A DNA stretch of 64,000 bases from Ophelia neglecta. Its lineage: Eukaryota. The number at the start of each line of letters is the position of its first letter. Position 1 is the stretch's first letter. Below the pieces are notes generated by a model. The model was not told where the DNA came from. It ran no database searches and worked only from the letters and a program-made list of their open reading frames with translations. Below are positions 2,448 to 61,714 of the stretch, in pieces. The DNA is taken from NCBI GenBank assembly GCA_965285935.1, contig OZ260661.1, positions 45,632,001 through 45,696,000 of the forward strand. Direction: 5' to 3'. A program made the position numbers and the translations under genes.

Positions 2448-5400
2448 CTCAGTAATCATTACACCAGACTGAGTCTGATTAATGATTGGAGCTAAGCCGA
2501 AGGGGTTGTCTCCTCTTAGCGCCTCGGGGTCGTCGAGTGAGTAGTATGTTATCAGACGGATCGGCGTGATCTTATCTACCGGGTTTTTCTGCCAATGGAA
2601 AAAAGATCAATAATGTATGGTGGGATATATTTTCATATTTAATAATTTGATTTTATCCTGGTATTTTTTCCAATTCCTTTCTGTAACAAACTTCTCCTGT
2701 GGTCCTGACGGCCATGACAAGACAAAAAACAAAAGTGAATCTATAACTTGCTCTGTGTAGGCGAAAAATAGTGCCGATGAAATGAACGGTGTTCTCCTTG
2801 ATCTTGATAGTTTGACCTACAACGCCCCTAATTATTCTGAATTGTGTTATACTGTAATGGTAAAAGATGTTGTGTCGCGAATAGGTCATGTAAACATGGT
2901 AAAAGAGGTGACGATGGTGTACTGATAACTGGCCACTTTCTTAATGTTGGACTGAAATTGTCTGTATATTCTCTTTGCTTTTTAATTGTATGATGGTCTT
3001 AATATTGCCAACCTGCAGCCGCTAATCGAAAACAAAAAAGTGAGGATCCGGTGGATACAGAGCTAGAGCTCTTAGCAGTCCATTGGCCAAGATATTTTAC
3101 TGGGTTGTTTTGGAAATTTCAGAGACTAAGTTGGTACCTCTGGTAATCAGGTTTTGTTTTATTCCTGTGAGCTTAACTACTCGGATCATAATTGTAGTGA
3201 TGGAAACCGAGAACTACTTTCAGCATGTAAAATCAGCATAAGGTTTATTTAAAATTTGTACTGAAGTATCCACTAATGACGAAAAATTAGCACTTCAGTT
3301 GGTCACATCTCGCCAGTATTTCATTAAATATGAGTTTGTACTCTCTTTAATTATTATTTGCACCATGACATGGCATATACAGCTAGAAAAATAACAATCG
3401 TGAGTAACTGAAGACAAACAATAACAACACAAATTCGACTAGAATTCATAGGAGTCGGTGTAACTTGTCCCTTTGAGAAACTTTATAATATAATTGTACA
3501 AGCAACATAACCATGTCCATTCAGGAATACGCTGTCGTCAAGGGCATGAACATTGAGTGATAAAATGTCATACGACCCAACACATGGAATGCTGTATATT
3601 CTAAAAAACTGACATTTTCGGAGCCAGTGGATCTGCAATAATGAAAAAAGCGTTGCTGTTTAACAAGTGAGCTACATGTTCAGGTTTTCTTGGTCCAGAA
3701 TTAGTACAGTTATATATAACTAGCAAGCTAAGTGTCATAAGTAAAAATGGTTGAAATAGCCACATATAGGCTAAATCGTTCAAATAAATACAATAGTGGC
3801 ATGACTATTTACCCTGCTAACCCTGCACTCTAAATCTACGCCCATTTATACACATCGGCCAGAAATCACTAATCAACAATGCGGCAAAGTCATCATTGCT
3901 CATTGTCAGTCACTACACCATTGTCAGTCACGTGACTTTGATGTTACAACTGTGCCAGTGATTCATGGCTTTATTAATTTTTAAAAATTTAACACTAATT
4001 ACATAATTTTCCTGTTCCTTTATTTAAGATAATTTTAATCGATTTTATAAGTTGGTTTTTCCATGCCGTGGTCCATGACTGTAGAATGATCAAGTAATTT
4101 CTTCGGGTGTCGGTAGAAAATGGAGAAAGAAACTTCGGGAAGCACCCCTCCCCCCCTCCTAATATATGGGAAGTACCCCCCCCCCCCTCCGGATATATAA
4201 TGCCATGTTGTCAGATTTCAAACAATAATTTGTTCATTTTACCCGGAACAAATTCCCATTAATTTTGTTACCTTCCGTATCATAATATGGCTGAACTAAA
4301 TACAAGTATACATCATTTATTGGCCAAATGCCGAGGAAAACAACGTTACAACAGCATACATGGCCATAGTGCGCTAGAGAAGAACATTAAATCTCAAAGT
4401 GGTCGAAATTTTCACGGAAACAATATAGGCGTATCTTTAAATCCATAAATAGCTCATTGAAAGTGGTCCAAACTTTATGGAGGTAATAATTATTATTCAG
4501 CCATATACTAAATTATAACAGTATTAACACTATTGATAGTTGTATTAAAAGCCTTGCAAAGTATGTTGTTAATAGTTTGCGAAATGTAGGACAAACATGA
4601 ACATTAATAAGTCAGACATTGGGGTAGGATGTGTTTGTATTACATAACTGAGCTGGGCTGTCATCACAGTTCGTTTGCTTGAACACTCTCCCAACATATT
4701 AATAAATAGTCTACACACATAATGTCTCTGTATGTTAGTAATTCTTGTTAAAAGGCTGGTTTGTATGAGCTGTGAGTTAATACAAAAAGAAAAATGAAAA
4801 CGAGATGAGAATGCCTACTACATGACTTACTGGCACTTGGATGTTAAAGTTCATTTCGGCTTCCCGTTCTCGTTCCAGTATGTTCCGACCCTGCCTCTCA
4901 CCCGTGGTGTTAATAAATCGAGCACGGTGTGAAAGGGATTCAAAATCGTCCACAGCGATATTCCAGTTAATTGCTGGTGGAAGAAAAATACGAAGCTGCG
5001 GATTATTTGAGCAAGATGCCGTATAAGATAGAGTATAATAGCCTATGCAAACATCAATATCTCGAGCGTAAGACTTTTGTTGCATCTGGGAGTAGAAGGA
5101 AATCCACCATCTCAGGATGTATTATGGTAAATTAAAACCACTGTGGTGCGGTACCGGCGTTCCTTTTGTCTTTGCATGGAGTGAATAAAGGATGGGTTTC
5201 CTTTTTTCCATTACAGGAGACTTTTTCATCGCATCCCGGCACCACAGGGCGGAGTACAGGTAGTCATTAAAATGTATCTATAGACTCACCATGACTTGTC
5301 GCAAGGGCCTGGGGTTTGAATGAATTCCAAGAGAATCTAAAACTGATGTCAAAACATGGAACGCTATTTCTTGAAGAAGTATTGCACATGTGTTCTCCCG

Positions 5401-8400
5401 GTTTGATGCACGTGTCTTGGAACGTGACGGTTGAAGAAATTGTGACGACCGGCCTGGAACGCACAACAAAAACGTGGTCCGACTCGTAAGCTCCCAAACT
5501 AATATCTATTCCGGGAGATAAACATTTTGATAAACATCTTATCATCCATCATAATTATGTACATGAATTCTTATGCAATTTGTCCACGTATGTTCAAATT
5601 TTTAAAAGTTATCCAACATATATCTAGTGTCATAATTTGAAAATGGAAACGTAGTGGACGCTTTTATCATTAATATAATTGTAAGAATTTTATTGCATTA
5701 GATAACGAAACATATATTTGTTTATTCTTCGTATTTTTAAGAAAGCGGTGGCCATTGTCGATTTCTTACGCCTCTTCCACAATTCTAGATAGACGACTAC
5801 CAAGCTGTTTAAGGCGCGACACTATTTCTCTCGGAATGACAACGCGATCTCTTTCAAGCGCGACCCCTTAGGGTTTGCATTGACCATAACCCGAGGCATG
5901 CCAGTTTTTATGTGTCAAATAATATGTCAATAAACATGAAACGAGCTTCGATTCAACTAATAACCGGAGTGGAGAAAATAAAAACTGGAAATCTTTCACA
6001 GTACGAAAATAAAAAGCAGATTTTAAAGAAATTAGGTTAACACATTTTTAATGTTGGCCGGTTTGCTGTACATTCGTTGATGTACTCGAATATTTCAAGT
6101 AACGAACAGCAACATATAAAACAATTTGGAACTAGTGGAAAATAGCTTGTTATTTTACTTTATATAGAAGCAGACGCTACCGTCATATCCGTTTCTATCA
6201 ATATCAAACGCTCCCGTCATCCCATATCCTAGACCACGTGGCTGCCCAGGCAGCTCATTGGCTGATATTCGCTGTGTGTAGTTGATGGATACGCCGTTAG
6301 GGGAGCCGTTAAACACATACACAGCGCCACGATTGTCGTTCTCATAGGGAGCTCCTACTATTAAGTCTGAGTGAGAATAATGGCAACAGTATTAAAAGTA
6401 CACAATGCCCGCTGTGAGATAAAATATTCTAAGGTCATCATAGCACATTTTTGTCCTAACATAAAACATACATGCGCCTTATTGGAAATATAATTTGGTA
6501 GTTATCGTTATAGGGAATAAACGATATTTATTTGTTCTTGACATGTAGGATGGACAGAAATAAATATATGAAATCCACATGAATTTTCTCCAAAGAATGT
6601 GCAGGTCTGTCTTTTTAATAATTAATCATATCAAACTACAATAGCGTGTCAGATAAATAATACTTGTTTACTGACCGGTGTAACCATCGCCATCCAGGTC
6701 TCCGGCGGAAGATATTGTTGTCCCAAATCTACTGAACTGCTGGTCGTTCTTCAATTTGGGTCCTTCAATCAAATCACCCTGTTTACAAAATTCACAAACA
6801 ATCCTCTCTGTTACTTAATCCGTTCAATATTAATGGTCTTCAACGACATTTAAGAATAAATATTGGTTAATTCTACACTCGAAAAAGGTGTTAACAAATA
6901 AATAATTGTAGCATGATTCTTTTAATTTTGAAAGTGGTCTGCACATTGAAAGGTGTGATTTAGAGAACAGTCTTATACATGTGGTTTACCTGAGTGCCGT
7001 AATACACGTACACCAGACCCTCGTCTCCTTGGCGAGTCGTGTAGAATGGTGCCCCAATAAAAAGGTCGTCCCAACCGTCTCCGTTTACATCAACAGCCAA
7101 CAGAGCAGATCCGAAACCAGACTTGTACTGGTGTTATTAAAAATACGAATTCAGATAATGTTAATTTCTACTCGATGAAAACTGACCAAATAACCGGATG
7201 TTTAATAGCACACTTTGTCTTATGCCATGCACTTAGGTTTTCGGTTAATAAATATACCAGGACAGGGAAAGAACATGTCAAATCTTGATTCATCTCAATT
7301 TATAAGATATTGGCTGAATGATATCGTGAATTCATGGCAGTTCATTAGGAGGCGGGTTCCAACGCGGGCCCCTCGTGCAAAGACAGTGAGGGTCTGGTCA
7401 CTGGAATTAGTGGGCTGCCGAAGATGGGCCAATGTACCTAGTCATATCGGGGTAGGCTGAACTGTAGCTTGGTTGCTATTCTCATATAACCGAGGCCTTC
7501 GGAAGGTACTGTCGAAAAGATGGACCTTGAGTCGAATAGAATCAAGGTTCATTCGAAAAAAAGGACGCACATGTGAAAAAGAAAGACGGAACGTATAGTC
7601 GAAAAGACGGAACGTACAGTCGAAAAGACGGAACGTACAGTCGAAAAGACGGAATGTATAGTCGAAACGACGGAAAAGACGGAACGAACAGTCGAAAAGA
7701 GGGATTGTATAGTCGCAAAGACGGAACGTATAGTCGAAAAGACGGAGCGTACAGTCGAAAAGACGGAGGGTAAACTTGAAAAGACGGAAGTTACAGTGGA
7801 AAAGACACACGGCACGTCGAAAACACGAAAGGTATAGTACAAATGTCGGAAGGCACAGTCGAAATGATTGAGACGGCTAATCCATGTTAATCTTGAGATT
7901 CAACATGATCTATAGGCTAAATGCATTGCGTGTGATACTTTAAGATACATGTATTGCATCCACCTGCGGTAACAATAGCAGTATAGTAGGCTCTAGTCCG
8001 GAGGGGGGGGGGGGGTGAAGGAGTATGAGAATGGGGGATTTGGGTGTTCCCTTCCCAGACCATCCTCTTGAGAGGTACACACCTCCCACGTCCTCGCCAT
8101 GTTCTCTGGAAGAGCAACTCCTAGACAGAGAGGGGCCAATGGAGACCAGAAACATTAATCAAGTCTGTTCATGCGGATAGGTTATCCAGTCCAGTTTCAC
8201 ACACACCTATATATCTGACCTAATTATATCTACCATTGAGACTGTAAAGAAGCAGCAATTATTCTTTACTTCTCCAATGCTTTAACTTACGCCCGATGTC
8301 TTACATAACATAATTCAGAGCTTAAAATTGGGCTTACCTGAGTCGAATTTAATCTTTTCAACAGGTAAGCATTTTGGACTTCCAGCCGATAAATAATTAC

Positions 8401-11297
8401 CTGAAATATTAAATATGTTAAGAATATGCCAGGATATGTATTATCAAGGCTCTTTTCTTTTATTATAAATGTAATTATTTATAAAAAAAAAACAACCTCC
8501 AATGTGTATCTATCATTACTGCATCTGTAAATAGCCAAGTGACCACGTGTGTGCTCATTAAATTATGATGCCAATCTTTTGCCTGTGCTGCGGGTTTATT
8601 ATTTGATAATTGACACTGGACAACAGGCAAAATGTGAAAAGATTATTTAGCTTTACTCAATGCAAATTTCTTAAATTAGATTAATGTACTTGTCCTTCCA
8701 GGTTGTAGTTCGGCGCTCCCGCCACCAAATTGTAGGAGTCTTTATCATCACTCAAGATATTACCGGTGGTGACTGCGTAGCCTTTGTGTTAAAAGCAGAC
8801 ATAAGGAAGAACTCTCAGACATAATTATCTTGACGTTCATTTGTGCCAGATGTTATAACAACTAATCAATATTAAGGGCACATACCAATGTATATAGAGC
8901 CCTTAACAATCACAGCTGCCAAACAAATTAATTGTGTTGCTTCAACAAAAGTGAAATCGAAGTTAGCTTCTGTCATGATACGAATCTGGCGTATTGCATA
9001 ATAAAATATTTACATAGATTTCATTACTTACCTAGGTTGCTGTTTTTTCGTACCGAGTACGGTATGTCACTGATAGAGTACCTCGTGTCATTAGTTAAAT
9101 AAAGCTCGACGCCACCTGGTAGTAAATATAATACAATACTGACATACTGACATACTGATATATGTGTAAGTTGAGAAGTAGATTTAGTGGTGTCGTACCA
9201 AATAGTTTCAGGAGTTCGAAGAAATGGCGGAGCTGTATTATTTTTGTATAAAAAAAGATTAACATATAAAATGGTACCAGAATTATCGTAGTGACGCTGT
9301 GGGAGACCCGGCCTACCGATGTACATATTATTATCCTGCAATTAAAATCGGGTGTACAAGAATCGTTGGGGTGAGTTTTAGATAGCCGATAGAATATCAG
9401 TGTAGTATGAAATATACAAATACATTTTAATAATCATTACTGGAAGAACAATGTTGTTGTTTACTATCATAGCGGGGCTGAATATACCTTTGCTACATGG
9501 GCTGACATTCCTGACAAAGTAGAACCAAACAGATATTTAAATTGTGTGGAATGGTTGTAGTAAACGCGGTGGCCATGACCCGTAAATCGGATTGTTTTAC
9601 TTTGCCCTTCTTCTGGGTGTCCCTCGTGTATATAGCAGATTCCATTCGGAGACCATTCATCTATACTACTATCGTTAAAGGCAACCTGATAATTATTCCT
9701 CCACAGATGGCCGCATGCCTGCAAGTTGTTCGAAGAAAATAAGTTCTCATTTACATATATGTAAATATATATTAGATCTAGGTTGAAAAAACAAAAAAGA
9801 CAGCTAGAAGTTACAATGTTATTTATAGTTACATGTATAAGTGGATATATATGGAAGACGAATTTTATATCTAAGAATTGTTCATTTATATAATTAGGTC
9901 CAGGATACAAAATACCAAACTAGTTTACAATGTTACAGGGGTTAATGTTTCCTCTTTTATTTCAAAAGATAAATATGGAGACTATCATTGATGATCATAG
10001 TCCATGTATATATAATACAGAGTCTGACAAGTAGGTGGTGTAGGTTGTACAACGTTAGGATATGCCGGTATCCGGCAAGACCCCCCCCCCCCCCCCAACC
10101 ACCAAATGATAATTCAGATATCCTTTATATATTTGTAAACCGCTTTTTCATATTGGCTTCGTGGAAATATTGATCAGTATGCTCGAGACTCGGAGTAATA
10201 ATGTGGCTGCTCTATACTTGGTAATTAATCGACATCTTTTCGGGGTTAGAAAAGACACTCGTTTATTTATTCTAAATGACAAACAAATAACAGATCCGTA
10301 TGTTGTGACCTGATAGTATTAAAGTAATTCTTGGCGAGTGCACGGTAGCCCGTATAAGGACAATCTCTACCGGTAGGCCTATGGTATAAGGGTATTAAGT
10401 TAGATATATAAATAAGTGAGTAAATAGCAATGGTTTTTTGCACATAGTCTTGTTTCAGAAGATATGCACTTGTGCAGAGCCCTTGTCAGTTTCGTCAGAA
10501 AAGTCTCATAGCTTATTATTAAAAAAGCCACCTCGTTTTTTCTCTCCAAAATGCCACCATATAGACATGTGTTATGTGCTATTTTATTTATTTATATTGA
10601 GATACAGATGTCCAAACACTGTGCACCTACCACCAGTCGGGAAGGAGAGCCGGCCCTGGAGTCAACTGATACTCCTAAAAATTGATGATCTTTGATATCT
10701 CCCCATAAATCCTTTCTGTGTGTATTTCCTAAAAAATGCAAACAGGAGAGCAATGTTAAAAAAAAGAAGACACCTTAAATGACCGAATAAAAAAACGACG
10801 TGAATTATACATAATAACCACTAATTAAGTGGATATAATCCCTTTACACTATTTGTTATTGCCTTAACCCCAGATCGGCTAGGAAAATAATAAATAACAT
10901 GCCTGTAGTTTCCAATCCTATTTGACTACAGGCTAGATCTGATAGGATGAGTGGACACATGTATATTGCTCCCGGAGACACTAAGCTGGGCACTTTACTC
11001 GAGTTGGCACGCGGAGCTCCAACCAGGAGCCTGTATATATTGAATAAGAGATTATACATTAACATCTATTCAATAATTTGCATTATGTTTTCCCAGCAAT
11101 TGTATTGTTATTTTGCCTTATACTACGTACCATGAATTTCCAGGAATTGAATGAATGGCAAGAGAAAATCCTAAGTAACTCCCAGCTGGTCCTTTATACC
11201 TAAGAGGTACGCCTTGAAGATCAATGTTATATGGGTGAACATTGCAAATCAGTCCCAAAGACATGGCAATCTCCCAAAACTGTAAATAACCCATCAT
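2448..11297 (-). CDS. Integrin alpha subunit, alpha4/alpha9-like, paralog D (partial: exons 1-14; calf/TM/tail exons absent from window)
   Basis: Exons: 11297-11131, 11030-10903 (GC donor), 10728-10631, 9718-9488, 9335-9278, 9115-9032, 8781-8690, 8400-8338, 7127-6990, 6778-6676, 6366-6181, 5505-5290, 4973-4831, 2588-2448. Open frame throughout. Exon 15 was not found in 1-2447, so the gene either continues off the left edge or is truncated. Confidence 0.85.
5141..5247. mobile_element. Small MITE-like inverted-repeat element (intron 12 of D)
   Basis: ctgtggtgcgg at 5141 and its reverse complement ccggcaccacag ending 5247. Confidence 0.45.
7560..7830. repeat. 21-bp minisatellite (AAGACGGAACGTACAGTCGAA), ~11 copies, intron 8 of D
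   Basis: Directly visible; explains the spurious repetitive ORFs 7442-7842. Imperfect inverted ends at ~7271 (gaacatgtcaaatcttgatt) and ~7910 (aatcttgagattcaacatgatc) suggest it lies in a non-autonomous DNA transposon. Confidence 0.9.
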
Positions 11298-12544
11298 TAG
11301 ATAGGTATTATTCCTGCCCTAAATGTTTAGATTTCTAGTTTGTATCACATTTAACAAGAGATCGGTTATTGTCGAGTATCCTTTGTATCATATCTTCAGT
11401 GTTAGTATAAAATTGTAATCTTCGGTATATAGCTCCTGTTCGAAAATGTCATATGATGGGTGTATCAATGTGTGTCTGCGAAACTGATAGAAGGATGTTT
11501 GAGTGTCAACTGCACTTGGTCCTTCCTGGAACCACTAAACTTGGTTTGGTTGTTCCAGGTCCTTCCCATAACGACCAACGCACACTCCGTTAATAGAAAT
11601 ATTATACACACACATATTTGTAAATTGAGCACATATACATGTATTGTATTTGCTCACCGCAATAGATTTGTCGAGCTAAGGCGAGTAATGGGAGAGTTTA
11701 GGTACAACTATGAGCTGGATCTTTAGACTGACTCATCACCATGTAATTTGGAACTAAAGGAACTTTGACAAGCAGGGAGCAATCATCAGATTCTACCCCG
11801 CTTGGGGGTATTAAGTCTCCTCGCATAGCAGGAACATGCTTTACCAGCTACCGTCAGCTGTAGGCCCACAGACCTCAGATAATTGTAAATAAAATTGTAA
11901 TGTATAGGATATTAAAATATAATATGCTAGTTTGCGATCAGGAGTTGTTTTTCCTGACGCTAGTCAAAGCACACTCAGAACGAACAGGTCAGTTGCCATG
12001 CCGTCAGGGAAACTACTAGATACTCGAAGCCCTTTTGAGGAATTGGACTGGGATTCCAAATCCAAATCATTCTAACATTAGGAATTCTACTGTATAGTAC
12101 TCAGATATATACGGCCTAATATCTATTGGACTGAATGAGGTTAATCTATTATCAGAATTGCTTATCTGTTAACAAACAATGCTAAGGAAATGTGCTTTAT
12201 TATTGACCAGAGTGTTGGTGGTGGTGGTGGGGGGGGGGGGGGGAGGCAAAACATTGTTCCCGGACGCGTCCTCAACCTCCCCCCCCCCTCATTTTTACTT
12301 GCACAATAAAAAAAAGTATAATAATACTCGTATACGTAAAACGTTACTTTAACATTTTCCTGAGTTTTATTCGAATGTTGCGTTGAAATAAATAAAGATT
12401 AAATAATTAAATAACGAGGAGTAGGCCCATTCAACCCCAAACTCTATATCTAATCATGAGTATAGTATGAAAAAGCATATTTATATCACGAGTCACTCCA
12501 ACACTGATTTTCTTTTGTTAATAAAAGGGCAACCCAAATCAGCC

Positions 12545-14512: not shown

Positions 14513-14859
14513 ATAGTTTCAAATGCAGAAGTTCGATTGCAATATACCCCTTGGACATTTCAGCGACCGCCGAGGGACCGACGATTATTTTGCACCAACT
14601 CTCGCGAGATCTCGCTAGACTTACCTCAATACGCTGAACTGATGGCCTCGTGGATGGACCTACGATTCTGCTGTGTTGCCGGGTGCAGTACATCCACCAA
14701 ACAACCGCCAAATACAGGACTCCCAACTGTTTTCACCGACAGCCTCCCGGTTTTCACCAATTTTCGCCTGGTTATTAACTCATTCTCAGTAATTCTGGCG
14801 GGTTTATTTACGAGTTCAAGATCTATCACGGCATCCAAAGATACTGTCGGTTTCTACTA

Positions 14860-15100
14860 GAATTTCTCTCTGCCCTTATTTAATCAGTAATTGTAAATTG
14901 TAAAGCATTTAGTTTCTGCAGACGGTTTATTTGGGGCTGTTGGATAATCGCAGAACCCCAAACTGTAAAAGTGTAAGGGCTATAGGCCTATAACACATTT
15001 GTTTTCACTGCGTTTGCATGCTTTCTCCATTGCTGATTTAACCACATGCGTTATGACATTAGGCCTAATATTTTTTTTTATACTGCAACTACCAGTGTGT
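14860..15100 (-). mobile_element. Possible CR1/L2-group LINE 3' ORF remnant downstream of paralog C
   Basis: Minus-strand remnant PYTFTVWGSAIIQQPQINRLQKLN resembles the CR1/L2 C-terminal YCxxVW...LQKLQN segment; short and degenerate. Confidence 0.4.

Positions 15101-27544: not shown

Positions 27545-27547
<3 letters not shown>

Positions 27548-27609
<62 letters not shown>
27548..27609. repeat. (GA)n microsatellite followed by a G-rich tract
   Basis: About 30 GA units; G-runs 27611-27682. Confidence 0.95.
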
Positions 27610-27612
<3 letters not shown>

Positions 27613-48760: not shown

Positions 48761-48791
<31 letters not shown>

Positions 48792-51700: not shown

Positions 51701-54700
51701 CTGCAGATTAAATCACGGCATTTCTTGCAGAAATGCATCTAGCGAAATGAAAAAGGCCACATCAAAGGTTAGAGACAATAAATGGCATTATGAAATGTTT
51801 TTTAAATTTACTTATTATATATAGTATAATAATATGATGTTTATATTAACCTCAGTAACCATTGAACCAGATTGTGTCTGATTGATGATCGGAGCCAAGC
51901 CGTACGGATTGTCTCTTCTTAGCTCCTCGCTGTCATTGTCAAGTGAGTAGCGTGTTGTTAAACGGATCGGCCTGATCTTATCTACAGTGTTCTTCTGCCA
52001 ATGAAAAACTAAAAAGGTTTCGGGTGCATACATTTACCTTGTTTATTCCTTTTAGTTTATTGATTCTCAGGAAAGACTACGACAAAGGCAGAATCAAGTT
52101 TACTGTAGTTTCTGAAAGCTACATTAATAAACAGAACACAGACAAAGGGATGAATTATCATAAAATGTCGTCTGCCTTTGAAAGGTCCTAAATCATATTA
52201 TCAAAGTGAACTAGTGTTGTACACGCGCTGTACAAAGCACTAAATATATTCGCTATGCTGTTCAACCGAATGTTCTCAAGTACGTAACTTACTGGCACTT
52301 GGATTATAATGTTCTGTTTTGTTTCCTCCTGTAGTTCCAGGACCTCCCGACCTCGCCCTTCTCCCGTCGCGTTCCCGTGATTGATCAAACGAGCTCTGTG
52401 TGTAAGATCTTCGTAATCGTCCATAATGGTATCCCAGTTTATTGCTGAGAGAGGGGAAATATTATTTTTAGCTTCTACAGTTTATTCCTGAATCTTCCAA
52501 TTGTACTGAAGGTTAATAGAATAAGTTATTAAATTAGTGGTTCACCGTGTGTTCGCGCCAGGGCCTCGGGTTTGGAAGAATTCCATGCCAACTTGAAGCT
52601 AACCCTAAAACAAGGAACGCTGTTTCCTGAAGACAATACACACACGTGTTGCTCCGGCTTGACGCACGTGTCTTGGAGGGTAATGGTTGTCATTATTGTG
52701 ATGACTGGTCTTGAACGGACAACAAACACGTGGTTCGAGTCGTAAGCTCCGACACCAAGATCTACTCAAAGAGACACGCTATTTAACATGGGTTTTGACA
52801 TTTTTTTATTAAACCTGGATTTCAACATTTTTGCGAAGTTGGACGAAAAAACAATTCGATAACATGGAATTGGTCTAATTTTATTTTTACAAATTTGATA
52901 TTCCGAAATATAATAACACAAGTTGGTAACATTTTATACAAGTATCTGAAGTGAATCTAGATGTGATTGTGAAGCTAAAAGTGCACCTGAATGTGGATTC
53001 CAATCTTATTTCACTTTGATTAGTTTTAAGTGGTCTAAAAATAATAACCAACACTCCCCTAGCATACAAAAATAATACGAGTTGAGAGTATTTAGTGGAA
53101 TCATGTAATTTCGATTGAAGTTCAGATATATTTTGTATATAAATCAAATTCTTCTGATATATATCAACACATTCAAATGAATTACTTCCGACTTTTAAAG
53201 TTTTCGAGTGAAGTAGAATAAACGTGGAATGTAACAAGCAGACTTTATATTACCGTCATATCCGTTTCCATCTATGTCAAATGCTCCCGCCATCCCATAT
53301 CCTAGACCACGTGGCTGTCCTGGCAGCTCATTGGCCGATATTCGCTGAGTATAGTTGATGGATACACCGTTAGGGGAGCCGTTAAACACATACACAGCGC
53401 CACGATTGTCGTTCTCATAGGGAGCTCCTACTACTATGTCTGAGTGCGGATATTGAAAAAGTGGTTTAAAGGTTGACGATTCCTGCTGTAAGATTACATT
53501 TAATATGAACTTTAGTACAGCATTCTTGACGTCTGAAATATTTATAAACATCTTGAAGAGTTTCCTGAAATGGTAACTTCTTTTTATGAAAATGCAGTGC
53601 AATAAACATGAAGGGATGTCAGAATTGGTATTCCCGTGATTTAATTATTTAATTGACAAAATCAGGACCAAAATTATGATAGCATACTATAGCATATTAA
53701 TCAAATAATAAGTGTAATGACCGTTGTAACCATCGCCATCCAGATCGCCTGCCGAAGATAGTGTTGTTCCAAATCTACTGAACTGCTGGTCGCTCTTCAG
53801 CTTGGGTCCTTCGATCAAATCACCCTGTTTAAAGAAAACTTACAGTCTTGTTTACTTGACGGCTAAAGGGGACAAGTCAAATATGATTCCTCTTATGTTT
53901 TAAACAATTTTATTAATCTCGAAAGAAAGCAAAATGTGTAAACAATTTATATAAACTTAGATAAGAACGACACAACGTTTAATTACGAGTTGATCCCTAA
54001 CGTGATTTGATGTTTTTGCATGCATGGTAGAGAGAACTGTTCAACAGGACTTTACCTGAATACCATAATACACGTGTACGAGACCCTCGTCTCCCACGCG
54101 AGTCTGTTGGAATGGGGCTCCTACAAATAGGTCATCCCAGCCGTCTCCGTTGACATCAACAGCTAACAGAGCAGACCCGAAACCAGACTTAAACTGAATT
54201 AAACAAACATAATTAAGATTTTTTCTTTAACTTTAAGATCACTGGCCTTAAAAGGACAAACACTTCTTGGATATTAGTAATAGTAACTATGCATAATTTG
54301 TTTTCTACTTTTGAACGTACATTTCTGGGTAGTGTATGGCTCCCCCTTCAATCATTGGTAGCCTATGTCTAATGGACCCAGAGTCAACTATTTAACAAAG
54401 CTGTGTGTCATTTGGCAACATACGCTACATTCTGTCTCGAATGCCTGACAAGCATTATCCTTCGCGATCTCCATACACTTAATTTTGAAAGAATTTTCCT
54501 AAGTTATTTTTTGTTTTCCTGTCCTTAGATAAATTATTTGTGATGTTAAATTATAATTTTTCTAAATGAACGTTCTCGTGCAACTGTGTGCTAACCATCT
54601 CAGATACAAATTTTGGAAGAGACTATTATACTATTTGGCTTGGTTTTGCCGGCCGACTAAAAATAATGTACAAGCTTTTAAAAATATACAATACACAATA

Positions 54701-57700
54701 TTCACGCTTTCTTATAGACAAGAAAATAGCCCTCTGTATTACACATAAAACACTTCGTACACTTGTAGGAGTAGGCCTACATGTATGCTTTGGTTCTCGT
54801 TTGAAGCGTACACCTTCGTATCCTCGGCCACGATAGTTACGTTTGACTCTGGATTACTAAGGGTTTCGTTCTTCCATAGCTCACTTGGCTGTATTTGAAT
54901 CTGATATTAGCAATATTTTGTATTGGTAGTCTACCTTTGGCCTATTAATGTCGGTTGGGACACAGTTTCAATATTTGTCAGGGCTGTATTCAATCGTTCA
55001 GGGCCTGGTTCGGTGGTAGGTGGAAGCAAATGTTGTACAAACAGTCAAATGGTTTGGGAATAATTTCACTGAATATTAGTCGATGACGGAATAGTTATGG
55101 AATAGTTTCACTGAATCGTTATCTATAACACGCAAATATGTTATTATATTGTCTTAATTGTCTAAATGTAGAAAACTCGATCCGGGGGAAAATCAGTATA
55201 TCAAGGATTTGCGCAGTGGCTGGCATATGTTTTTTCTGCAGTTCGGCTATGGTACAGGACTTTCGTCTCCCAAAAATATAGCACCTCACATATAAAGTTA
55301 TAAACTGCTCTGATTGATAGAAAACCGATGTTGACAGCAATTGTTGGCGCTGTCTGAATCATGGTTCATGGTATTCAGTCAATATAATAATAAATAGTCG
55401 TACTTTGAACTCTGCTTAAAGCGTCAATCAAATCAGATATACCGATAATGTGGCAAGACGTCGGCCGAGTAACAAACTTGTGCCTCTAGAGAAATGACTG
55501 ATTATTAGCATATAGGCCCTATAGAATCTACAGGAAATTGTCTTTTAAATCTTGTAATCCATTATAATTATATACGTATCGTTTGACTTACTTGCGTTGA
55601 TTTTAATCGTATCAAAATGGAAGCATTATGGACCGAATTAAGGACCGCCAGTTGGTAAATGGTTACCTAAAACATTATCAAGGTTAAAAAATGTCAAAGA
55701 TAATTAAATATTCCTCTTTTCGAAAAATTAACACAATGAATACATTATAGAATATAAACGCATTTGAATTAGGCATATAATCTTAACGTTGATCGAATGC
55801 TAGTGTTAACATTAAAATGTATGATATTTATATAGTTCAGTTTCAATCTAAGACTTTTAATCCCACATAGCTAGACCAAATAGCAACAGAAATAAAATTT
55901 TGTGCAAAAGGAAACAAATTTGGAGAAAACTACTTGCGCCATATTAGAAATAGGATCCTATTTTGTCACTAAGTCTTGTGTCCCAAAAAACGAGTCATGC
56001 CATGAATTATTTTGATCATATATTTCATCTTAACTTAAATCTTTTGTTTAATATATTATTCCATGATTCAATATTCAGGCTTTTGATTATGAATAGTTAT
56101 TCAATATATTTGTGTCTATCATATTAGCCCTATTATATTCATCCATGGTCGGCCTATCCGCCAGAAGGCGGCCTCGGTATGGTTTATTTGTTTATATATT
56201 CAGTGAATTTCTATATTCCGGGTTGCCCAATCACTTCGAAACACTCATATCCAAACCAATTGTCTCTTCTATCAGAGTCATTGCCAGATACTCGTTCTGC
56301 GAGACTATTTAACTCGGGCGTTGCGCAGGTTGGATTCGCTTTCGCGTCAGGTTAAAGTCAAACGCGAGTCAGTTGACTCGTAAAAAAATCATTGGGAGTC
56401 AAGAATCCAAACCAGAGTCAATTGACCAGAGTCAGCTTAATAACATGCAGAATACTCATACTGCGAGTCAATTGGACTCGAGTATTGCACCAGGTCGACT
56501 CGTCTCAGCGTCTATCCTGAATGGCCTCGAACCGAACGAGAGTCAATTCACCGAGCACGCGCAACTGCTTTCTCTCAAGGCGGGAAATTTTGTGGCGTTT
56601 GGATCATGCGGTCGTAAAGATCATTGTAAGTACAACTTAATATTGTAAACCTTAGGTCAAGTATTGCGATATTGGCGTGCTTCTGATTTTATGGGAATTC
56701 ATATATCAGCATGCTTTAACATAAAATTAGAATATGGAAGAAACGAGCCTAAAATTGAAAAAAACAAGTAAAGTGTAAACTCTGTTTAGACGGTGTGCAA
56801 CCCTCAGCTCTAGTTCAGATGAGTGCATTTTCGAAGCAGGTATCCTGTTATATTCTATCTATTTTTGCAGATGTGTTGGCTCTAGGATAACAGACATCAT
56901 TTGGTTACGATCTGGAGGATTATGTGAACCATGCTGGCATAACATTGTTGTTTATAAAACGTTTATGATATATTATGACCTAAACAAATCAATTAATTTC
57001 TGGCGCCATATCTGTATTGGCCCATGAGATGCTGCAGATTTTCATACAGTGCAAATTCATAATATTCTTTTTAAAGAATAAGGAAATGTTTACAGTTCAT
57101 TGATAGTTAAAATTACAGAGGTTTGTTGGCATTGTTGATTCCTTTCGGGTTCAGTAGCAGCACCTGTGACCCTGTTGCAGACGTCCTCACTCCGATGAAG
57201 AGTCCAAATGACTCTGCTAAAGAGTGAAATGAATGTTGTCAATGGTCAAAATGTGTTTTATATATATTTTTCATAAGTGTCAAAATGACCCTGGTTAGAG
57301 TCAAAATGACCCTGCTTAAAAGTCAAAATCACTTTTAAGAGTCAAATGACTGTGGTGTAGAGTCACTATATGTTTTATAAGAGTCCCAATGACTCTGGTT
57401 AGAGTCTAGTTGACTCTGGTTAGGAATCAAATTGACTCTATTAAAAGAGTCACTATAGAATTGGCGGGGGTCAAAAAATGGACCCTGGCACAATGTAGCA
57501 ATAAGCTTGTTAAACTCGCTCGGGAAGACACAAGTGTTATACTCAATCCTGATGCAATGCTTTAAGTTACCAATGGACACAGCCACTACAAGTTTCGTAA
57601 GTTGACTTCAACAGTAAGGATCTCAAGTAGGTTAACAGAACTCGACTATTGTGTATAAGACGTTAATTTTATAATCCTATATATTTCTCTTTCGACGCAA

Positions 57701-60700
57701 TGCGCTTTTAGTTATAGAACCCAGAGAGCTAAATAAATCGTATAATTTGTATATTAATGATAATAATAATAATAATAATGGTATAGCGTTAGCTTTGTCA
57801 ATTCCGTACATATGTAACAAACTTATTTCTATTACAATTTTGTCTAGGTTTAGCCTTAGATTGACTGAACTATACACGTTATTGTTTTAACATTTTTGGA
57901 GTATCCTTTTTGACATTAATTTATATACTTGTCCTTCCAGATTGTAGTTCGGTGCTCCCGCCACCAAATTGTAGGAGTCCTTTGTATCGCTCAAGATATT
58001 ACCAGTCGTGATTGCGTAGCCTTGGCGACAATTAGAGACATAATGAAGTAAATTCACGTAGTATCATGATGTTTCTGCTGATAAATAATACTAAGTAGAC
58101 AAAACAAAAATATTAAAGGAATAAAAAAAATTGTCATTTGAGCAACGAAATAGTTTTTTTGCTGCTTACCCTATTTAGTCCACTTTTTATATTGCTAACT
58201 TCTCTATCTCCGCAAATAATAAACTCGTCTCGGTTTTTACTCTACCCCTTATTTAAATCCCTCTGAAAGGATGGTTTATTATTGTTTCGAGAAAAAATTA
58301 TGTATAGTGGAATGCCAGCTTCAGACAACAGCGTGTCTTTTCAGTGCAATTGCATGTTCATTTGGTTTGATAATGCACAGGGCATTATCAAACATACTAC
58401 TTCGTTGTACCAGATTGACCAACAAAATTGAACGGAATTTAGACAAAAAAAATCCTTCGAACGACAGCGTTCGCTTAGAAAATATTCTCGGTTCTACCTG
58501 GCGTCGAGCCTTATCTGGCTGCCATTCGAGGGGTTAAATCAGTAAATAAAACATATCTATATTAGCTATCCGTCTTAAGAAGATTTAATGCATCTGATTT
58601 TGTTTTCTTACCTAGGTAGCTGCTATTTTCCTGCGCCGAATACGGTATATTGCGTATAGGGTATGGGCTCCGAGCAGGCCTAAAATCTGGTGTGTACACG
58701 ACTATGCCTCCTGGTATACGTATAAATAACATTAACATTCACAAGAGAACGGTATTTGAACGTAAGTGAAAGGAAGGTTCAGATTGATTGTCAACTCTTG
58801 AATAAGTATGTTGTGGTTTATTTTGTTAATAGATAATTTTGCCCCTTAGTTAATATTAAATTATAATTAAGTCACTAAGCTGTAGTTTTTACTTGTTACC
58901 TTATCTTTTTCGATTAGGCCTAGCGATTTCGTTATTACAGATCACTTTTAACCATGACAGTGTTTTTAAATGAATTTAAGTAATAAGGATTACCAGAAGC
59001 TTCAGTGGAAGGCTGCGAATAACCTGGTCTACTGATGTATATTTTATCGTCCTGTAAATTGAAGTTAAGTTTCAGACAGTGGATCATCACCATATAGCAC
59101 TGCCGTAGCCATACCTTGGGAATGGACTAATGTTCACCCTTTAAGGGATCTGGGAGAATTATGCCCAAATTTGGATTCTTTGTTAAATGGCTGAGACAAC
59201 AATTTTGCACTGAATTTCGGCAAATAAACTATTGAAAAAGTGACTTTCTTTAACAGGTTACCAAGGAGAAGGGCGCGTTCGAATGCCTCGATAAAGTACC
59301 CCCCACCCTCAACCCCTAGTAGAATTTTGGACCCGGCCCATGTGTATAGTCGCCAATGATCTTTTAAACAGTAAGTATAATAATAGCGAGATATACTATA
59401 CTTTAGCCACATGGACTGCCATCCCAGACAAGTCAAATAGAGGTCCATACTTTGAGAACCGGATTGTTATGGTGTTCCCTGCTTGCAGATGTCCTTCGTG
59501 TATGTAACAGATTCCATTTGGGGGCATGATGTCGGTTCTTTTGTGTACAATTTGAAAGTTGTTTCTCCACAGATGTCCGCATGCCTGTAAAATCGTTTGA
59601 AAATTCTAATAACCTATATTAATAAAATAACGAGGTCCAAGCCTCTGTTATTGTGCAGAAAAATCAGGATTAGCGTCTCAGGGTCTTCAGTTTTAATGAG
59701 TGATAGCTAACATATCGTCCCTGTGCCATTTTGTTTTTGAGCCTCGACGGGTCATTACAAAGAGCAAAACTGAAGAAAGAACAGATAGCTTTGGGAGGCG
59801 AACCCGTCATCTTATCGCCTGCGAAAAAGCTGTAACATCGCTTGCAAGCCCTGCGTCTTAACCATTCACCCGAAGGGGCCGGTGGCGGACACGTATGCAC
59901 TTAAGTGATAGAATGGTCACACAGAATACGGAAATGTTATTGACTTTTTTTTATGTAGGCCTACCTCTGCTTTTTGAAGAAACTATCCGTTAGATACTTG
60001 AATGCGTAGCCAGAAAATTTATCTTATACTATTGCACATATAAAAACATGCACGATACCGTTATAGGCCTATGGTGGTCATGTAGTGTAAGTATTCTCTC
60101 ATGGGTGTGCAGTGGTATCAGCAATAAACGATATTATATCTAAACAGAACCTAGTGGTGGTGGGGTGCGTTGGGGTGAAAGAGGGGACGAATATGCTTAA
60201 ATTTTAAAGTTTTTTAAATAATTTTTTTTTCTATTAACCAGGGAGGGCAAGGCTAGGAGGAGGAAGGTTAGGGAAGGGTGCTGATAGAGCAATTGAGGGG
60301 AGTGTCTGAAACATAAACCTATGACTGCGGATGGTTTGGGGAAGAAAGGGGGGGGGCTCCATTGACGGGGGTTTAAATGATTAATAGATGAGATGATGAA
60401 TTGGGGGGAGGGCGTATAGTGATGTGTAGGCATTAAGTTGTTGCTGAGAAAGAAAGTGCTGCTAAGAGACTCAGGGGATTGAAAGTGAACTAAGCTAACG
60501 GGTCTTTCTAGTGGGCCAAATAAAGAAAGGGAAACATATGGTGATGCCAATTATAATACTGTGGGGGAGATAATCAGCTCCTTTATGCTAACCTCGGGCC
60601 TGTTGTTAGACATTGATATGCGACCAAGGTTTTCTCTCAAATATTGACACACGACACAATTCAATTCCTCGACCCTATAATTATGACACTGACATGTAAT

Positions 60701-61714
60701 TATTGACACAAGACACTAGTTTGTACTTGAATATTGACAAACCACCGTTGGACTTCCTTAAGGTTTACACAAACTTTAGTTTGCTGAAACATTGGACTGC
60801 ATCCGTCATTCATTATCGAAATAAACTAGAAACTCACTATCATTCGGGAAGAGGCACCGGATCTGGCGTCAAGCGAAACTCCTAAAAACTGACCATCTTT
60901 GACATCAGCCCACTTTGAATTGTCAGAATTGCCTGTAAGTATTGTTTAAATTACAGAAGAACAGCATAGGAAATAGAAGGAAACTGAAGAGAAATGTAGA
61001 CAAACTGGTCACAGTTAATAAATAAAATTCAAAATGTGTTGATAGCCCAATACAGTAAAACCTGCCCTAAAGACCACCTCTATAATTAGACCACCTGCCA
61101 ATTCAGACCACTGATATGAGGACCATGCTGTATGTTATCATTGTTAAATAACCTGTCTAAACAGACCACTTTTGAAATCAAACCAATATTTTCCAGTCCC
61201 TTTGATGGTCTTAATTCACATGTTTCACTGTATATACAATTAGGGACTTTTTTTTTATAGATTTTTGGATCCAGCCAGCTACAAAGAATAAGATATTTCG
61301 AAGTAGATATCTTGCCATACCTGTAGTGTCCAGCGCAATCTGACTACAGGCCAGATGTGATAGGCTGCCGAGGGGACACTTGTATATCACTCCTGGGGAC
61401 ACTAAGGTCGGCTGTGCAGAAGAGTTGGCTCGGGGAGCACCTACCAGCAGCCTACAAATACGTATATTAAATAGATTTTTAAACATTGTAATCCGTCCAG
61501 TAATTTATTTCATTGTGTGTTGAACATTTTAAGTTACCGACCATGATGAATTTCCGGGAATCGTGTAAGCGGCAAGAGAAAATCCCAAAAAACTTCCTGC
61601 TGGTCCCTTGTAACTTAGGGGAACACCATAAAGATCAATATTATAGGCATTAACAACGCAAAACAGTCCAAAAACAATGGCTGCCCTCCTCCACTGTATA
61701 GTACAAGCCATCAT
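47506..61714 (-). CDS. Integrin alpha subunit, alpha4/alpha9-like, paralog A (21 exons, ~1055 aa, no I-domain)
   Basis: Hand-spliced exons with GT-AG introns and frame preserved: 61714-61542, 61451-61321, 60932-60838, 59584-59402, 59051-58994, 58710-58612, 58020-57929, 55666-55592, 54193-54056, 53824-53722, 53439-53254, 52761-52546, 52444-52293, 51994-51851, 51738-51278, 51118-50923, 50748-50623, 49844-49716, 49002-48916, 48031-47915, 47712-47506. Signal peptide then YNID; FG-GAP repeats (LLVGAP, VAGAP, FVGAP, VVGAPYE); Ca loops DVNGDG, DLDGDG, DIDGNG; RSRPVI thigh start; TM VPWWVIIVSGVAGIILFIILIIVLMK; KMGFFRR tail. Confidence 0.93.
56310..57490. mobile_element. Probable non-autonomous DNA transposon with subterminal GAGTCA/TGACTC arrays (intron 7 of A)
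   Basis: Dense GAGTCA/GACTC repeats at both ends (56360-56550 and 57200-57475) around AT-rich filler; true termini not resolved. Confidence 0.5.
58253..58538. mobile_element. Possible piggyBac-type MITE (intron 6 of A)
   Basis: TTAA-bounded, imperfect inverted ends ttaaatccctctgaaagg / ccattcgaggggttaa. Confidence 0.4.
61053..61230. mobile_element. Tc1/mariner-pogo-type MITE, same family as 32286-32448 (intron 2 of A)
   Basis: TA|CAGTAAAACCTG...CATGTTTCACTG|TA; internal sequence colinear with the other copy. Confidence 0.82.

What the first reader, a model, noticed from the sequence alone, without database searches (positions are those of the whole stretch)
2448..61714. Tandem array of at least four I-domain-less alpha4/alpha9-like integrin alpha genes in an invertebrate-type genome
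Seen: four same-strand paralogs with identical exon phases, three complete and intact. Known: vertebrate ITGA4 and ITGA9 are single, unlinked genes important in leukocyte adhesion; ACGHRWKN and GFFRR-type signatures match that clade. Inference: a lineage-specific expansion, possibly a blood-cell/coelomocyte adhesion or immune-recognition receptor family.
Basis: partly seen in the sequence, partly recalled or inferred. Interest (0 to 1): 0.75.

Follow-up and report, generated by a model that had tools for sequence, protein, structure and literature searches.

The report
Tandem array of integrin alpha genes
The window holds four of six neighbouring copies of a cell-adhesion receptor gene (integrin alpha, without the I-domain) in an unnamed invertebrate; the copies look intact and functional, which makes this a family expansion of a kind already seen in flies, sea squirts and oysters.

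Summary
Four same-strand (minus) integrin alpha paralogs lie at the stated coordinates. A, B and C are complete. D is complete only with its last seven exons, which lie just outside the window. Each gene has 21 exons with identical phases, an open frame of 1033-1045 codons, a signal peptide, FG-GAP propeller, thigh and calf-1 domains, a transmembrane segment and a GFFRR tail. There is no I-domain.

The array is larger than reported. Two more copies (E, and the divergent F) follow downstream, giving six genes in about 104 kb. D is a chimera made by a roughly 15-kb tandem duplication with breakpoints in intron 13: exons 1-13 are 97% identical to E, and exons 14-20 are 92% identical to C.

dN/dS is 0.21-0.38 for every pair among A-E, so the copies are under purifying selection.

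Exon-by-exon likelihood placement puts the array on the alpha4/alpha9/PS3-like side of the family (RELL 0.93). The PS1 and PS2 stems are worse by 24-25 lnL. Orthology to vertebrate alpha4/alpha9 is not resolved.

No RNA data were found, so the proposed blood-cell or immune role is untested. Verdict: a real, ordinary lineage-specific expansion and a new member of a known kind.

The parts
47506..61714 (-). Gene A: complete integrin alpha gene, 21 exons, CDS 3129 nt (1042 codons)
   Evidence: exons: 61714..61542; 61451..61321; 60932..60838; 59584..59402; 59051..58994; 58710..58612; 58020..57929; 55666..55592 (exon 7b); 54193..54056; 53824..53722; 53439..53254; 52761..52546; 52444..52284; 51994..51851; 51738..51278; 51118..50923; 50748..50623; 49820..49740; 49002..48916; 48031..47915; 47712..47506. 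All introns are AG/GT and there is no internal stop. Pfam hits: FG-GAP, Integrin_A_Ig_1, Integrin_A_Ig_2 and the Integrin_alpha tail.
29646..42397 (-). Gene B: complete integrin alpha gene, 21 exons, CDS 3138 nt (1045 codons)
   Evidence: exons: 42397..42234; 40689..40559 (GC donor); 39951..39854; 39619..39383; 39045..38988; 38457..38371; 38208..38117; 37087..37025; 36844..36707; 36472..36370; 36201..36016; 35838..35623; 35371..35211; 34987..34844; 34728..34268; 34109..33917; 32216..32091; 31195..31115; 30595..30509; 30276..30160; 29840..29646.
15805..25956 (-). Gene C: complete integrin alpha gene, 21 exons, CDS 3120 nt (1039 codons)
   Evidence: exons: 25956..25790; 25312..25182 (GC donor); 25021..24924; 24539..24309; 23985..23928; 23645..23559; 23367..23276; 23082..23020; 21452..21315; 21162..21060; 20893..20708; 20456..20241; 20111..19951; 18613..18470; 18372..17912; 17774..17594; 17453..17331; 17216..17136; 16743..16657; 16401..16285; 15999..15805.
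2448..11297 (-). Gene D, exons 1-13. Exons 14-20 lie outside the window at -1084..-3589. Whole CDS is 3102 nt (1033 codons). D is a chimeric copy.
   Evidence: exons in the window: 11297..11131; 11030..10903 (GC donor); 10728..10631; 9718..9488; 9335..9278; 9115..9032; 8781..8690; 8400..8338; 7127..6990; 6778..6676; 6366..6181; 5505..5290; 4973..4822; 2588..2448. Exons 1-13 are 96.9% aa identical to E, and exons 14-20 are 92.0% identical to C.
59402..59584 (-). Exon 4 of A (homologues: 39383-39619, 24309-24539, 9488-9718). Starts with ACGHLWRN. It is a variable, indel-rich propeller loop region and lacks the two cysteines of the PC...CQAG stretch seen in the references.
   Evidence: mean aa identity 56%, 58 gapped positions over 6 pairs.
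53254..54193 (-). Exons 8-10 of A: the three Ca-binding FG-GAP blades (DVNGDGWDD, DLDGDGYN, DIDGNGYD). This is the most conserved part of the paralogs.
   Evidence: aa identity 88%, 88% and 94%.
47506..48031 (-). Exons 19-20 of A: transmembrane segment, GFFRRNRHEG, and an acidic tail of about 60 residues ending in YVSAVMKK
2425..18436 (-). Duplication unit 1 (C exon 14 through D exon 13). Its copy, unit 2, lies at -1017..-15998 (D exon 14 through E exon 13).
   Evidence: blastn: 14845-18436 vs -4580..-1017 is 89.7% identical; 9846-12511 vs -7196..-4580 is 88.2%; 4775-9839 vs -13394..-8381 is 92.3%; 2425-4775 vs -15998..-13646 is 98.0%.
1..2424 (.). High-copy repeat that fills D's 3.5-kb intron 13, including a 417-bp unit x2 at 880-1714. 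It lies at the junction of the duplication.
   Evidence: word depth is 7,800-108,000 here against about 20-90 beyond 2425, and contigs end at 2425. One search finds the tandem repeat. In the other paralogs intron 13 is about 100 nt.
12560..14171 (+). Reverse-transcriptase fragment (retroelement) between C and D, inside the 2.3-kb stretch that unit 2 lacks
   Evidence: PF00078 RVT_1, E 1.3e-21, for 12560-13309; homology gap 12511-14845.

Best explanation
The window carries four members (A-D) of a six-gene, head-to-tail array of integrin alpha-subunit genes on the minus strand of contig C1 (about 45.590-45.694 Mb).

Each gene encodes a type-I membrane protein of about 1040 residues. It has a signal peptide, a seven-bladed FG-GAP beta-propeller with three Ca-binding loops and no inserted I-domain, thigh and calf Ig-like domains, one transmembrane helix, a GFFRR hinge and a long acidic tail. 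It has no furin-type cleavage site.

The array grew by tandem duplication through unequal crossing-over. The latest event duplicated about 15 kb between the intron-13 positions of two neighbouring genes. That event created gene D as a fusion of an E-like 5' two-thirds with a C-like 3' third.

The genes belong to the third, non-PS1/non-PS2 group of I-domain-less alpha subunits (alpha4/alpha9/PS3-like). They are kept by purifying selection.

Inferred, not shown: each alpha pairs with one of the genome's three or more beta subunits. The paralogs differ mainly in ligand specificity, because the variable exons 3-7b encode upper propeller loops while the Ca-binding blades and legs are conserved. A blood-cell or immune role is possible by analogy only.
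For: Anatomy:
- Pfam finds FG-GAP (E 6e-11), Integrin_A_Ig_1, Integrin_A_Ig_2 (E 1.4e-14) and the Integrin_alpha tail on single exons.
- All four models have 21 exons, equal phases and open frames.
- Of the 21 exons, 16 align collinearly to full-length I-less references.
- In D the introns around exons 4-7 are only 153-251 nt, which leaves no room for I-domain exons.
- No RxKR motif occurs in any exon of A-D.

Array extent:
- Six loci lie in C1 45.593-45.686 Mb, out of 11 alpha loci in the genome.
- None were found in the 40 kb fetched on either side.

Duplication:
- blastn blocks are 88-98% identical and include introns and intergenic DNA.
- Amino-acid identity is mosaic: D/E 96.9% in exons 1-13, C/D 92.0% in exons 14-20.

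Selection: dN/dS is 0.21-0.38 for all 10 pairs among A-E in both gene halves.

Clade:
- In the fixed-topology placement summed over 16 exons and 908 columns, the best three branches are all on the alpha4-like side.
- The central branch is worse by 10.6 lnL, the PS1 stem by 24.4, the PS2 stem by 25.3, and positions inside PS1 or PS2 by more than 91.
- RELL is 0.93 for the alpha4-like side, and 11 of 16 exons individually place best there.
- The CGH[RL]W motif is restricted to the alpha4 set.
- The in-genome PS1 and PS2 orthologues are the most distant alpha loci.
Against: - No transcript evidence exists. The only runs found are three runs of one sample, of unknown kind and kept as contigs. Splice sites, the GC donors and expression are therefore predictions.
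- The clade signal is modest. A test with free topologies gave the alpha4-like side the best score by 59-79 lnL, but with a standard error of about 70 and RELL 0.74. BLAST sums favour the alpha4 set only slightly.
- Against human chains, alpha-4 is best for exons 2 and 10. Alpha-5 is best for exon 8. Alpha-IIb and alpha-V are best for exon 11, with alpha-4 last. Exons 4 and 14 hit no integrin at all.
- Five of 21 exons (6, 7b, 12, 16, 18) could not be aligned and were dropped.
- The array is a long branch, and the alpha4-like side has the longest reference branches, so long-branch attraction is possible.
- Calf-2 is not recognised by Pfam exon by exon.
- E lacks a recognisable complete exon 16 and the conserved C-terminus. 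F is only partly modelled, with 16 of 21 exons.
Confidence: 0.85

Rival explanations
1. The array is an independent old lineage of alpha subunits. It would branch on the central branch between the alpha4-like and the PS1+PS2 groups, not be a member of the alpha4/alpha9/PS3-like group. Its CGHLW motif would then be ancestral or convergent.
For: - The central branch is only 10.6 lnL worse, with RELL 0.05.
- Identity to every reference is just 33-40% on the alignable exons.
- Human-chain comparisons are mixed.
- The array lost two cysteines that all three reference groups keep in exon 4.
Against: - The three best placements all lie on the alpha4-like side.
- 11 of 16 exons place best there.
- CGH[RL]W occurs in 71 of 110 alpha4-set proteins and in 0 of 239 PS1-set and PS2-set proteins.
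- GAPRANSS-type exon 2 is seen only in alpha4-set references: 9 of 110 against 0 of 239.
Confidence: 0.1
2. Part of the array (D, with the D/E and C/D blocks) is an assembly artefact: two haplotypes laid in tandem. The true locus would then have five genes.
For: - The blocks are 88-98% identical, including non-coding DNA.
- The junction is filled by a very high-copy repeat at which short-read contigs break.
- Only one sample is available, and contig depth cannot give copy number.
Against: - There is no N in the window or the fetched flanks.
- dS is 0.186 between C and D in exons 14-20 and 0.062 between D and E in exons 1-13. Together with a 2.3-kb insertion and many indels, this is far above ordinary allelic divergence.
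- Contigs matching D at 97% or better are present in all 3 runs from 2425 to about 5400, and to about 5800-6000 in two of the three.
- D has an open frame across the junction, and dN/dS is 0.22-0.25 for both blocks.
Confidence: 0.05
3. The genes belong to the PS1 (laminin-type) or PS2 (RGD-type) clade, or are one-to-one orthologues of separate ancient genes.
For: - Single exons place best with PS1 (exons 1, 5, 10) or PS2 (exons 14, 17, 20).
- The exon 8 profile scores best with human alpha-5, and exon 11 with alpha-IIb and alpha-V.
Against: - The summed placement is 24.4 lnL worse on the PS1 stem and 25.3 worse on the PS2 stem, with RELL 0.01 and 0.005.
- The genome already has one clear PS1 orthologue (44-50% identity to PS1 references over up to 13 HSPs) and one PS2 orthologue on contig C2.
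- The six array genes are each other's nearest relatives and lie in tandem.
- The CAHRY and CAPRY motifs are absent, as is a furin site.
Confidence: 0.02
4. The copies are decaying pseudogenes or unexpressed relics.
For: No RNA evidence was found. E has a damaged exon 16 and an altered C-terminus.
Against: - A, B, C and D have open frames of 1033-1045 codons with conserved splice sites.
- dN/dS is 0.21-0.38 for all pairs, including the youngest blocks.
- Per-exon dN/dS is 0.05-0.75, never above 1.
Confidence: 0.05

Closest known systems
Vertebrate integrin alpha4 / alpha9 (ITGA4, ITGA9)
   Same: - Both lack an I-domain.
- Both have a CGH[RL]W motif at the start of the blade-2/3 region. Vertebrate alpha-4 references read CGHRWKN.
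- Both have a GAPxxNxS-type exon 2.
- The array has no furin-type cleavage site. That alpha4/alpha9 are uncleaved at the heavy/light site is recalled, not tested.
- Human alpha-4 is the best solved chain for exons 2 and 10.
- The placement is on the same side of the tree.
   Different: - Identity is only about 33-40% on alignable exons, and orthology is not resolved.
- The two cysteines of the PC...CQAG stretch are lost.
- The cytoplasmic tail is about 60 residues after GFFRR, with its own conserved end.
- The hinge is GFFRR rather than GFFKR, which is not diagnostic.
Drosophila alphaPS3 / alphaPS4 / alphaPS5
   Same: A lineage-specific small family of I-domain-less alpha subunits outside PS1 and PS2, with closely linked genes. 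[quoted passage not shown] Insect PS3-type proteins fall on the same side of my reference tree.
   Different: This is a different phylum-level lineage. The array's PS1 and PS2 orthologues resemble nemertean, brachiopod and annelid sequences most. There are six genes in one array rather than two linked plus one apart. No functional data exist here.
Ciona intestinalis alpha5-alpha8 tandem duplicates
   Same: Both are recent tandem duplication of integrin alpha genes with retained exon sizes. Both are a lineage-specific clade. The Ciona authors link such clades to blood cells and innate immunity (passages of Ewan et al. 2005, PMC1145181).
   Different: The Ciona genes carry an A/I-domain and belong to the I-domain-related clade. 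The genes here have none.
Oyster-specific alpha integrins (Crassostrea gigas, 8 alpha / 3 beta)
   Same: An expanded and divergent alpha repertoire in a spiralian, with 3 beta subunits. Here there are 11 alpha loci and at least 3 beta loci. The oyster genes are proposed to have immune functions in haemocytes (abstract and passages of Lv et al. 2020, PMC7390872).
   Different: In the passages I saw, the oyster genes are listed on different scaffolds, and the word 'tandem' does not occur in that paper's main text. That paper states that alpha4/alpha9-type receptors are generally lost in invertebrates, which my reference tree and this array do not bear out.

Membership tests
Integrin alpha subunit | FG-GAP beta-propeller repeats with Ca-binding DxDxDG loops | tested here: met
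   PF01839 is above its cut-off on exons 8 and 10 of A and weak on exon 9. The motifs are DVNGDGWDD, DLDGDGYN and DIDGNGYD in all four window genes.
Integrin alpha subunit | Thigh, calf-1 and calf-2 Ig-like leg domains | tested here: inconclusive
   Integrin_A_Ig_1 matches exons 11 and 13 just below its cut-off (25.6 and 20.9 bits against 26). Integrin_A_Ig_2 matches exon 14 at 54.7 bits against a cut-off of 24. Calf-2 (PF20806) is not recognised on exons 15-18 taken singly, although exons 15 and 17 align to that region of the references.
Integrin alpha subunit | Single transmembrane helix followed by a GFFxR hinge | tested here: met
   The hydrophobic stretch is in exon 19 and GFFRRNRHEG in exon 20. 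It sits at 47695, 29823 and 15982, and in D outside the window. PF00357 is weak at 17.5 bits.
Integrin alpha subunit | Forms a heterodimer with a beta subunit | not testable with these tools
   At least three beta loci exist in the genome. Pairing is inferred.
alpha4/alpha9/PS3-like group | No inserted I (vWA) domain | tested here: met
   Exons 1-11 are collinear with I-less references. Introns between exons 4 and 7 are 153-592 nt in A-D. No vWA hit was seen on any exon scanned.
alpha4/alpha9/PS3-like group | Falls on the alpha4-like side of the split from PS1+PS2 in a tree | tested here: met
   RELL 0.93. The central branch is -10.6 lnL and the PS1 and PS2 stems are -24.4 and -25.3. The test was done exon by exon on 16 of 21 exons, with 44 references and a fixed FastTree topology in which the PS1+PS2 split has support 1.0.
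alpha4/alpha9/PS3-like group | CGH[RL]W motif | tested here: met
   ACGHLWRN is invariant in 4 of 4 window genes. The motif occurs in 71 of 110 alpha4-set references, 0 of 120 PS1-set and 0 of 119 PS2-set.
Vertebrate alpha4/alpha9 orthologue | Sister to vertebrate ITGA4/ITGA9 to the exclusion of other invertebrate alpha4-like genes | tested here: inconclusive
   The stem of vertebrate alpha-4 (0), Owenia P0036 (-0.55) and the stem of the protostome alpha4-like group (-1.08) cannot be told apart. No vertebrate alpha-9 was in the reference set.
PS1 (laminin-type, alpha3/6/7) | Groups with PS1; CAHRY-type motif | tested here: not met
   The PS1 stem is -24.4 lnL and positions inside PS1 are -92.6. 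The motif in the array is CGHLW. A separate PS1 orthologue lies at C2:21.96 Mb.
PS2 (RGD-type, alpha5/8/V/IIb) | Groups with PS2; CAPRY-type motif | tested here: not met
   The PS2 stem is -25.3 lnL and positions inside PS2 are -91.2. The motif differs. A separate PS2 orthologue lies at C2:52.00 Mb.

The most novel reading that the evidence does not exclude
The array is a diversifying receptor repertoire. Unequal crossing-over at a fixed intron (intron 13) recombines ligand-binding head modules (exons 1-13) with leg, membrane and tail modules (exons 14-20), as it did for gene D. Meanwhile the upper propeller loops (exons 3-7b) diverge by substitutions and indels. Together these would give an invertebrate blood-cell lineage a set of alpha subunits with distinct recognition specificities that share signalling through a private, conserved cytoplasmic motif.
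Probability: 0.15. Interest if true: 0.6.

Novelty: new member of a known kind. Interest (0 to 1): 0.35.

Why it matters
The locus adds a clean, well-resolved example of how integrin alpha repertoires expand outside vertebrates. It has six linked genes, a dated series of duplications and one gene caught as a fresh head/leg chimera. It also shows that the third (alpha4/alpha9/PS3-like) group, not PS1 or PS2, is the part of the family that expands in this lineage: nine of the eleven alpha loci fall outside PS1 and PS2.

If expression turned out to be restricted to coelomocytes or haemocytes, it would match the pattern reported for Ciona, flies and oysters, where lineage-specific alpha subunits serve innate immunity. 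As it stands this is a sound annotation result rather than a surprise.

Tried and rejected
Searches and tests that gave little or were rejected:
- The search of protein representatives with the 154-aa calf-1 exon gave only 8 hits, the best at 41% identity. No close relative of these genes, and no protein of this species, is in that library.
- A PDB search with the same exon gave nothing at E 0.01. The exon 4 profile gave no integrin hit.
- The first likelihood test used free within-group topologies. It timed out once, and with -fast it was too noisy (standard error about 70 lnL). I replaced it with a fixed-topology placement.
- The summed BLAST score per reference separates the groups only weakly.
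- Fragment alignment placed exons 6, 7b, 12, 16 and 18 inconsistently, so I dropped them from the placement.
- The look-up of sequencing runs found no RNA run. Read laying on contigs cannot give copy number, so expression and the haplotype question stay open.
- The search of earlier findings gave two neighbouring first-reader notes. It gave nothing for 'integrin' or for taxon words.
- I could not name the organism. Run labels are coded, and I had no protein search left for a marker gene.
- I considered a Dscam-like cassette locus and rejected it, because every unit has its own ATG, signal peptide, transmembrane exon and stop.
- I did not request supplements of the cited papers.

Full report
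WHAT IS THERE. The window is G000:C1:45632001-45696000 of a 762-Mb assembly in 223 contigs. GC is about 38% and there is no N.

A six-frame motif scan found the FG-GAP/Ca-loop peptide SGFGSALLAVDVNGDGWDD four times. It found GFFRR followed by NRHEG three times. All hits are on the minus strand.

An all-against-all comparison of stop-free minus-strand segments showed four collinear series of about 20 conserved blocks. Pfam on single blocks of the first series gave:
- FG-GAP (42.4 bits)
- Integrin_A_Ig_1 (25.6 bits)
- Integrin_A_Ig_2 (54.7 bits)
- the Integrin_alpha tail (17.5 bits)
All, with more. These are integrin alpha genes.

GENE MODELS. I aligned the paralogous blocks with their flanks. 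I then chose shared AG and GT columns, corrected three donors where the script had taken the second GT of GTRAGT, extended exon 2, and found exon 7b of gene A.

The result is 21 exons per gene with identical phases, and open frames of 1042 (A), 1045 (B), 1039 (C) and 1033 (D) codons. All introns are AG/GT except intron 2 of B-E, which has a GC donor (CAG|GCATG). I prefer this donor to an upstream GT because the 8 extra codons are conserved and align to the references.

The frame check carried at most 2 nt across each junction.

THE ARRAY IS SIX GENES. A genome-wide scan with Integrin_A_Ig_2 gave 11 loci, six of them in C1 45.593-45.684 Mb. A profile of exon 10 gave the same 11.

With the flanks fetched, tblastn of A's exons shows:
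- D's exons 14-20 just outside the window (-1084..-3589)
- a fifth gene E (-5764..-19831)
- a sixth, divergent gene F (about -26100..-41840)
- nothing in the 40 kb upstream of A or in the 38 kb beyond F

E has 20 recognisable exons. Its exon 16 is only partly recognisable and its C-terminus differs. F is modelled for 16 of 21 exons.

HOW IT GREW. Self-blastn shows that -15998..-4580 (E exons 1-13 plus upstream DNA) matches 2425..12511 (D exons 1-13 plus upstream DNA) at 88-98%, introns included. It also shows that -4580..-1017 (D exons 14-20 plus downstream DNA) matches 14845..18436 (the same part of C) at 89.7%.

This is one tandem duplication of about 15 kb whose ends lie in intron 13. D is the fusion gene at the junction. 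Protein identities agree: D/E 96.9% in exons 1-13 but 86.0% in exons 14-20, and C/D 92.0% in exons 14-20 but 72.7% in exons 1-13.

Intron 13 is about 100 nt in A, B, C and E but 3.5 kb in D. The window part of that intron (1-2424) is a very high-copy repeat. Word depth there is 7,800-108,000, against roughly 20-90 further on, and short-read contigs stop at 2425. It contains a 417-bp unit twice.

The upper copy also holds a 2.3-kb insertion with a reverse-transcriptase fragment. The older duplications (A, B, C, and the D/E ancestor) have dS 0.43-0.72, and F is saturated.

ARE THEY FUNCTIONAL? dN/dS is 0.21-0.38 for all ten pairs among A-E, in both halves, including the young blocks. Per exon it is 0.05-0.75.

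Variation is uneven:
- Exons 6, 7b and 4 are 45-56% identical with indels.
- Exons 7-10 are 86-94% identical.

This agrees with the neighbouring first-reader note on hypervariable loops. dS also varies by exon (0.2-1.8), which suggests gene conversion or a mosaic history. That is an inference.

No RNA run was found. The three runs that hold the stretch are one sample, of unknown kind, kept as contigs. Expression is therefore unknown.

WHICH KIND OF ALPHA? There is no I-domain. Exons align collinearly to I-less references, and the introns where an I-domain would sit are 153-592 nt. No RxKR site occurs, whereas such a site is present in 102 of 120 PS1-set, 81 of 119 PS2-set and 38 of 110 alpha4-set references.

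I collected three reference sets with the word search:
- an octopus alpha4-like query
- a Pycnogonum PS2-type query
- an amphioxus ITGA6 query

A FastTree of 74 representatives recovers PS1, PS2 and a PS1+PS2 branch, each at 100. The alpha4/alpha9/PS3-like sequences fall on the other side.

For the placement I used 44 references and 16 alignable exons (908 columns; exons 6, 7b, 12, 16 and 18 were dropped). I attached the array to each of the 85 branches of the fixed reference tree and summed the exon likelihoods. The results were:
- The best three branches are all on the alpha4-like side: stem of vertebrate alpha-4 at 0, Owenia P0036 at -0.55, stem of the protostome alpha4-like group at -1.08.
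- The central branch is at -10.6, the PS1 stem at -24.4 and the PS2 stem at -25.3.
- Positions inside PS1 or PS2 are below -91.
- RELL is 0.93 for the alpha4-like side, 0.05 for the central branch, 0.01 for the PS1 stem and 0.005 for the PS2 stem.
- 11 of 16 exons place best on the alpha4-like side.

Results against this reading, in full:
- The earlier free-topology test was not significant.
- BLAST sums differ little.
- Among human solved chains, alpha-4 is best only for exons 2 and 10. Alpha-5 wins exon 8. Alpha-IIb and alpha-V win exon 11, with alpha-4 last. Exons 4 and 14 hit nothing.
- The array is a long branch.

Motifs:
- ACGHLWRN is present, not ACGHRWKN. CGHRW is absent from the window.
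- CGH[RL]W is specific to the alpha4 set: 71 of 110 against 0 of 239.
- GFFRR is not specific: 9 of 110, 10 of 120 and 14 of 119.

THE REST OF THE FAMILY. The other five alpha loci are:
- a clear PS1 orthologue at C2:21.96 Mb, whose best matches are JGI, Lineus and Lingula PS1-type proteins at 44-50% identity
- a PS2 orthologue at C2:52.00 Mb, whose best matches are Owenia and Lingula alpha-8
- three divergent genes (C1:87.88 Mb and a tandem pair at C9:44.45/44.48 Mb), which are the array's nearest relatives at 39-42% identity

At least three beta loci exist, two of them in tandem. The PS1 and PS2 matches suggest a spiralian animal, but I could not name it.

COMPARISON WITH WHAT IS KNOWN. Linked, lineage-specific alpha genes outside PS1 and PS2 are described for Drosophila alphaPS3/4/5 (passages of PMC2180234). 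Tandem alpha duplicates are described for Ciona, though with an A-domain (passages of PMC1145181). An expanded, partly oyster-specific repertoire with haemocyte functions is described for Crassostrea gigas (abstract and passages of PMC7390872). PMC2784866 gave nothing useful.

My five paper searches found no description of a six-gene alpha4-like array. Because the species name is hidden from me, I cannot say that this locus is not in print.

VERDICT. The clade call is supported at the level of the broad alpha4/alpha9/PS3-like group. The functional reading is untested. This is a new member of a known kind, and the chimeric gene D is its most instructive detail.

Noticed in passing
window 1-2424 (continues to about -1017 in L008): A very high-copy repeat fills intron 13 of gene D. 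Word depth is 7,800-108,000, against about 20-90 in the unique sequence next to it. It includes a 417-bp unit repeated twice at 880-1714, with an inner 69-bp repeat.
   Followed up: partly
window 12560-14171 (+): A retroelement remnant: an ORF with reverse transcriptase (PF00078, E 1.3e-21) followed by a second ORF of 260 aa with no Pfam hit. It lies in the C-D intergenic stretch that the younger duplicate lacks.
   Followed up: partly
window 47506-47712, 29646-29840, 15805-15999: The cytoplasmic tail is about 60 residues after GFFRR.
   Followed up: partly
window 59402-59584 and homologues: Exon 4 of all six genes lacks the two cysteines of the PC...CQAG stretch that PS1, PS2 and alpha4-like references keep. 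It reads (G)FSLSGMAVHVAK instead, so a conserved propeller disulfide is probably lost.
   Followed up: no
window 62088-62935 and about 64288-65114 (partly in L004): An inverted pair of about 850-bp repeats, 81.6% identical, lies upstream of gene A. It is probably a transposon remnant.
   Followed up: no
G000:C9:44.45 and 44.48 Mb; G000:C2:27.20 and 27.23 Mb: A second tandem pair of divergent alpha genes and a tandem pair of integrin beta genes lie elsewhere in the genome.
   Followed up: partly
window 40559, 25182, 10903 (and E): Intron 2 of B, C, D and E appears to use a GC donor (CAG|GCATG), where A and F have GT. This is unverified without RNA.
   Followed up: partly
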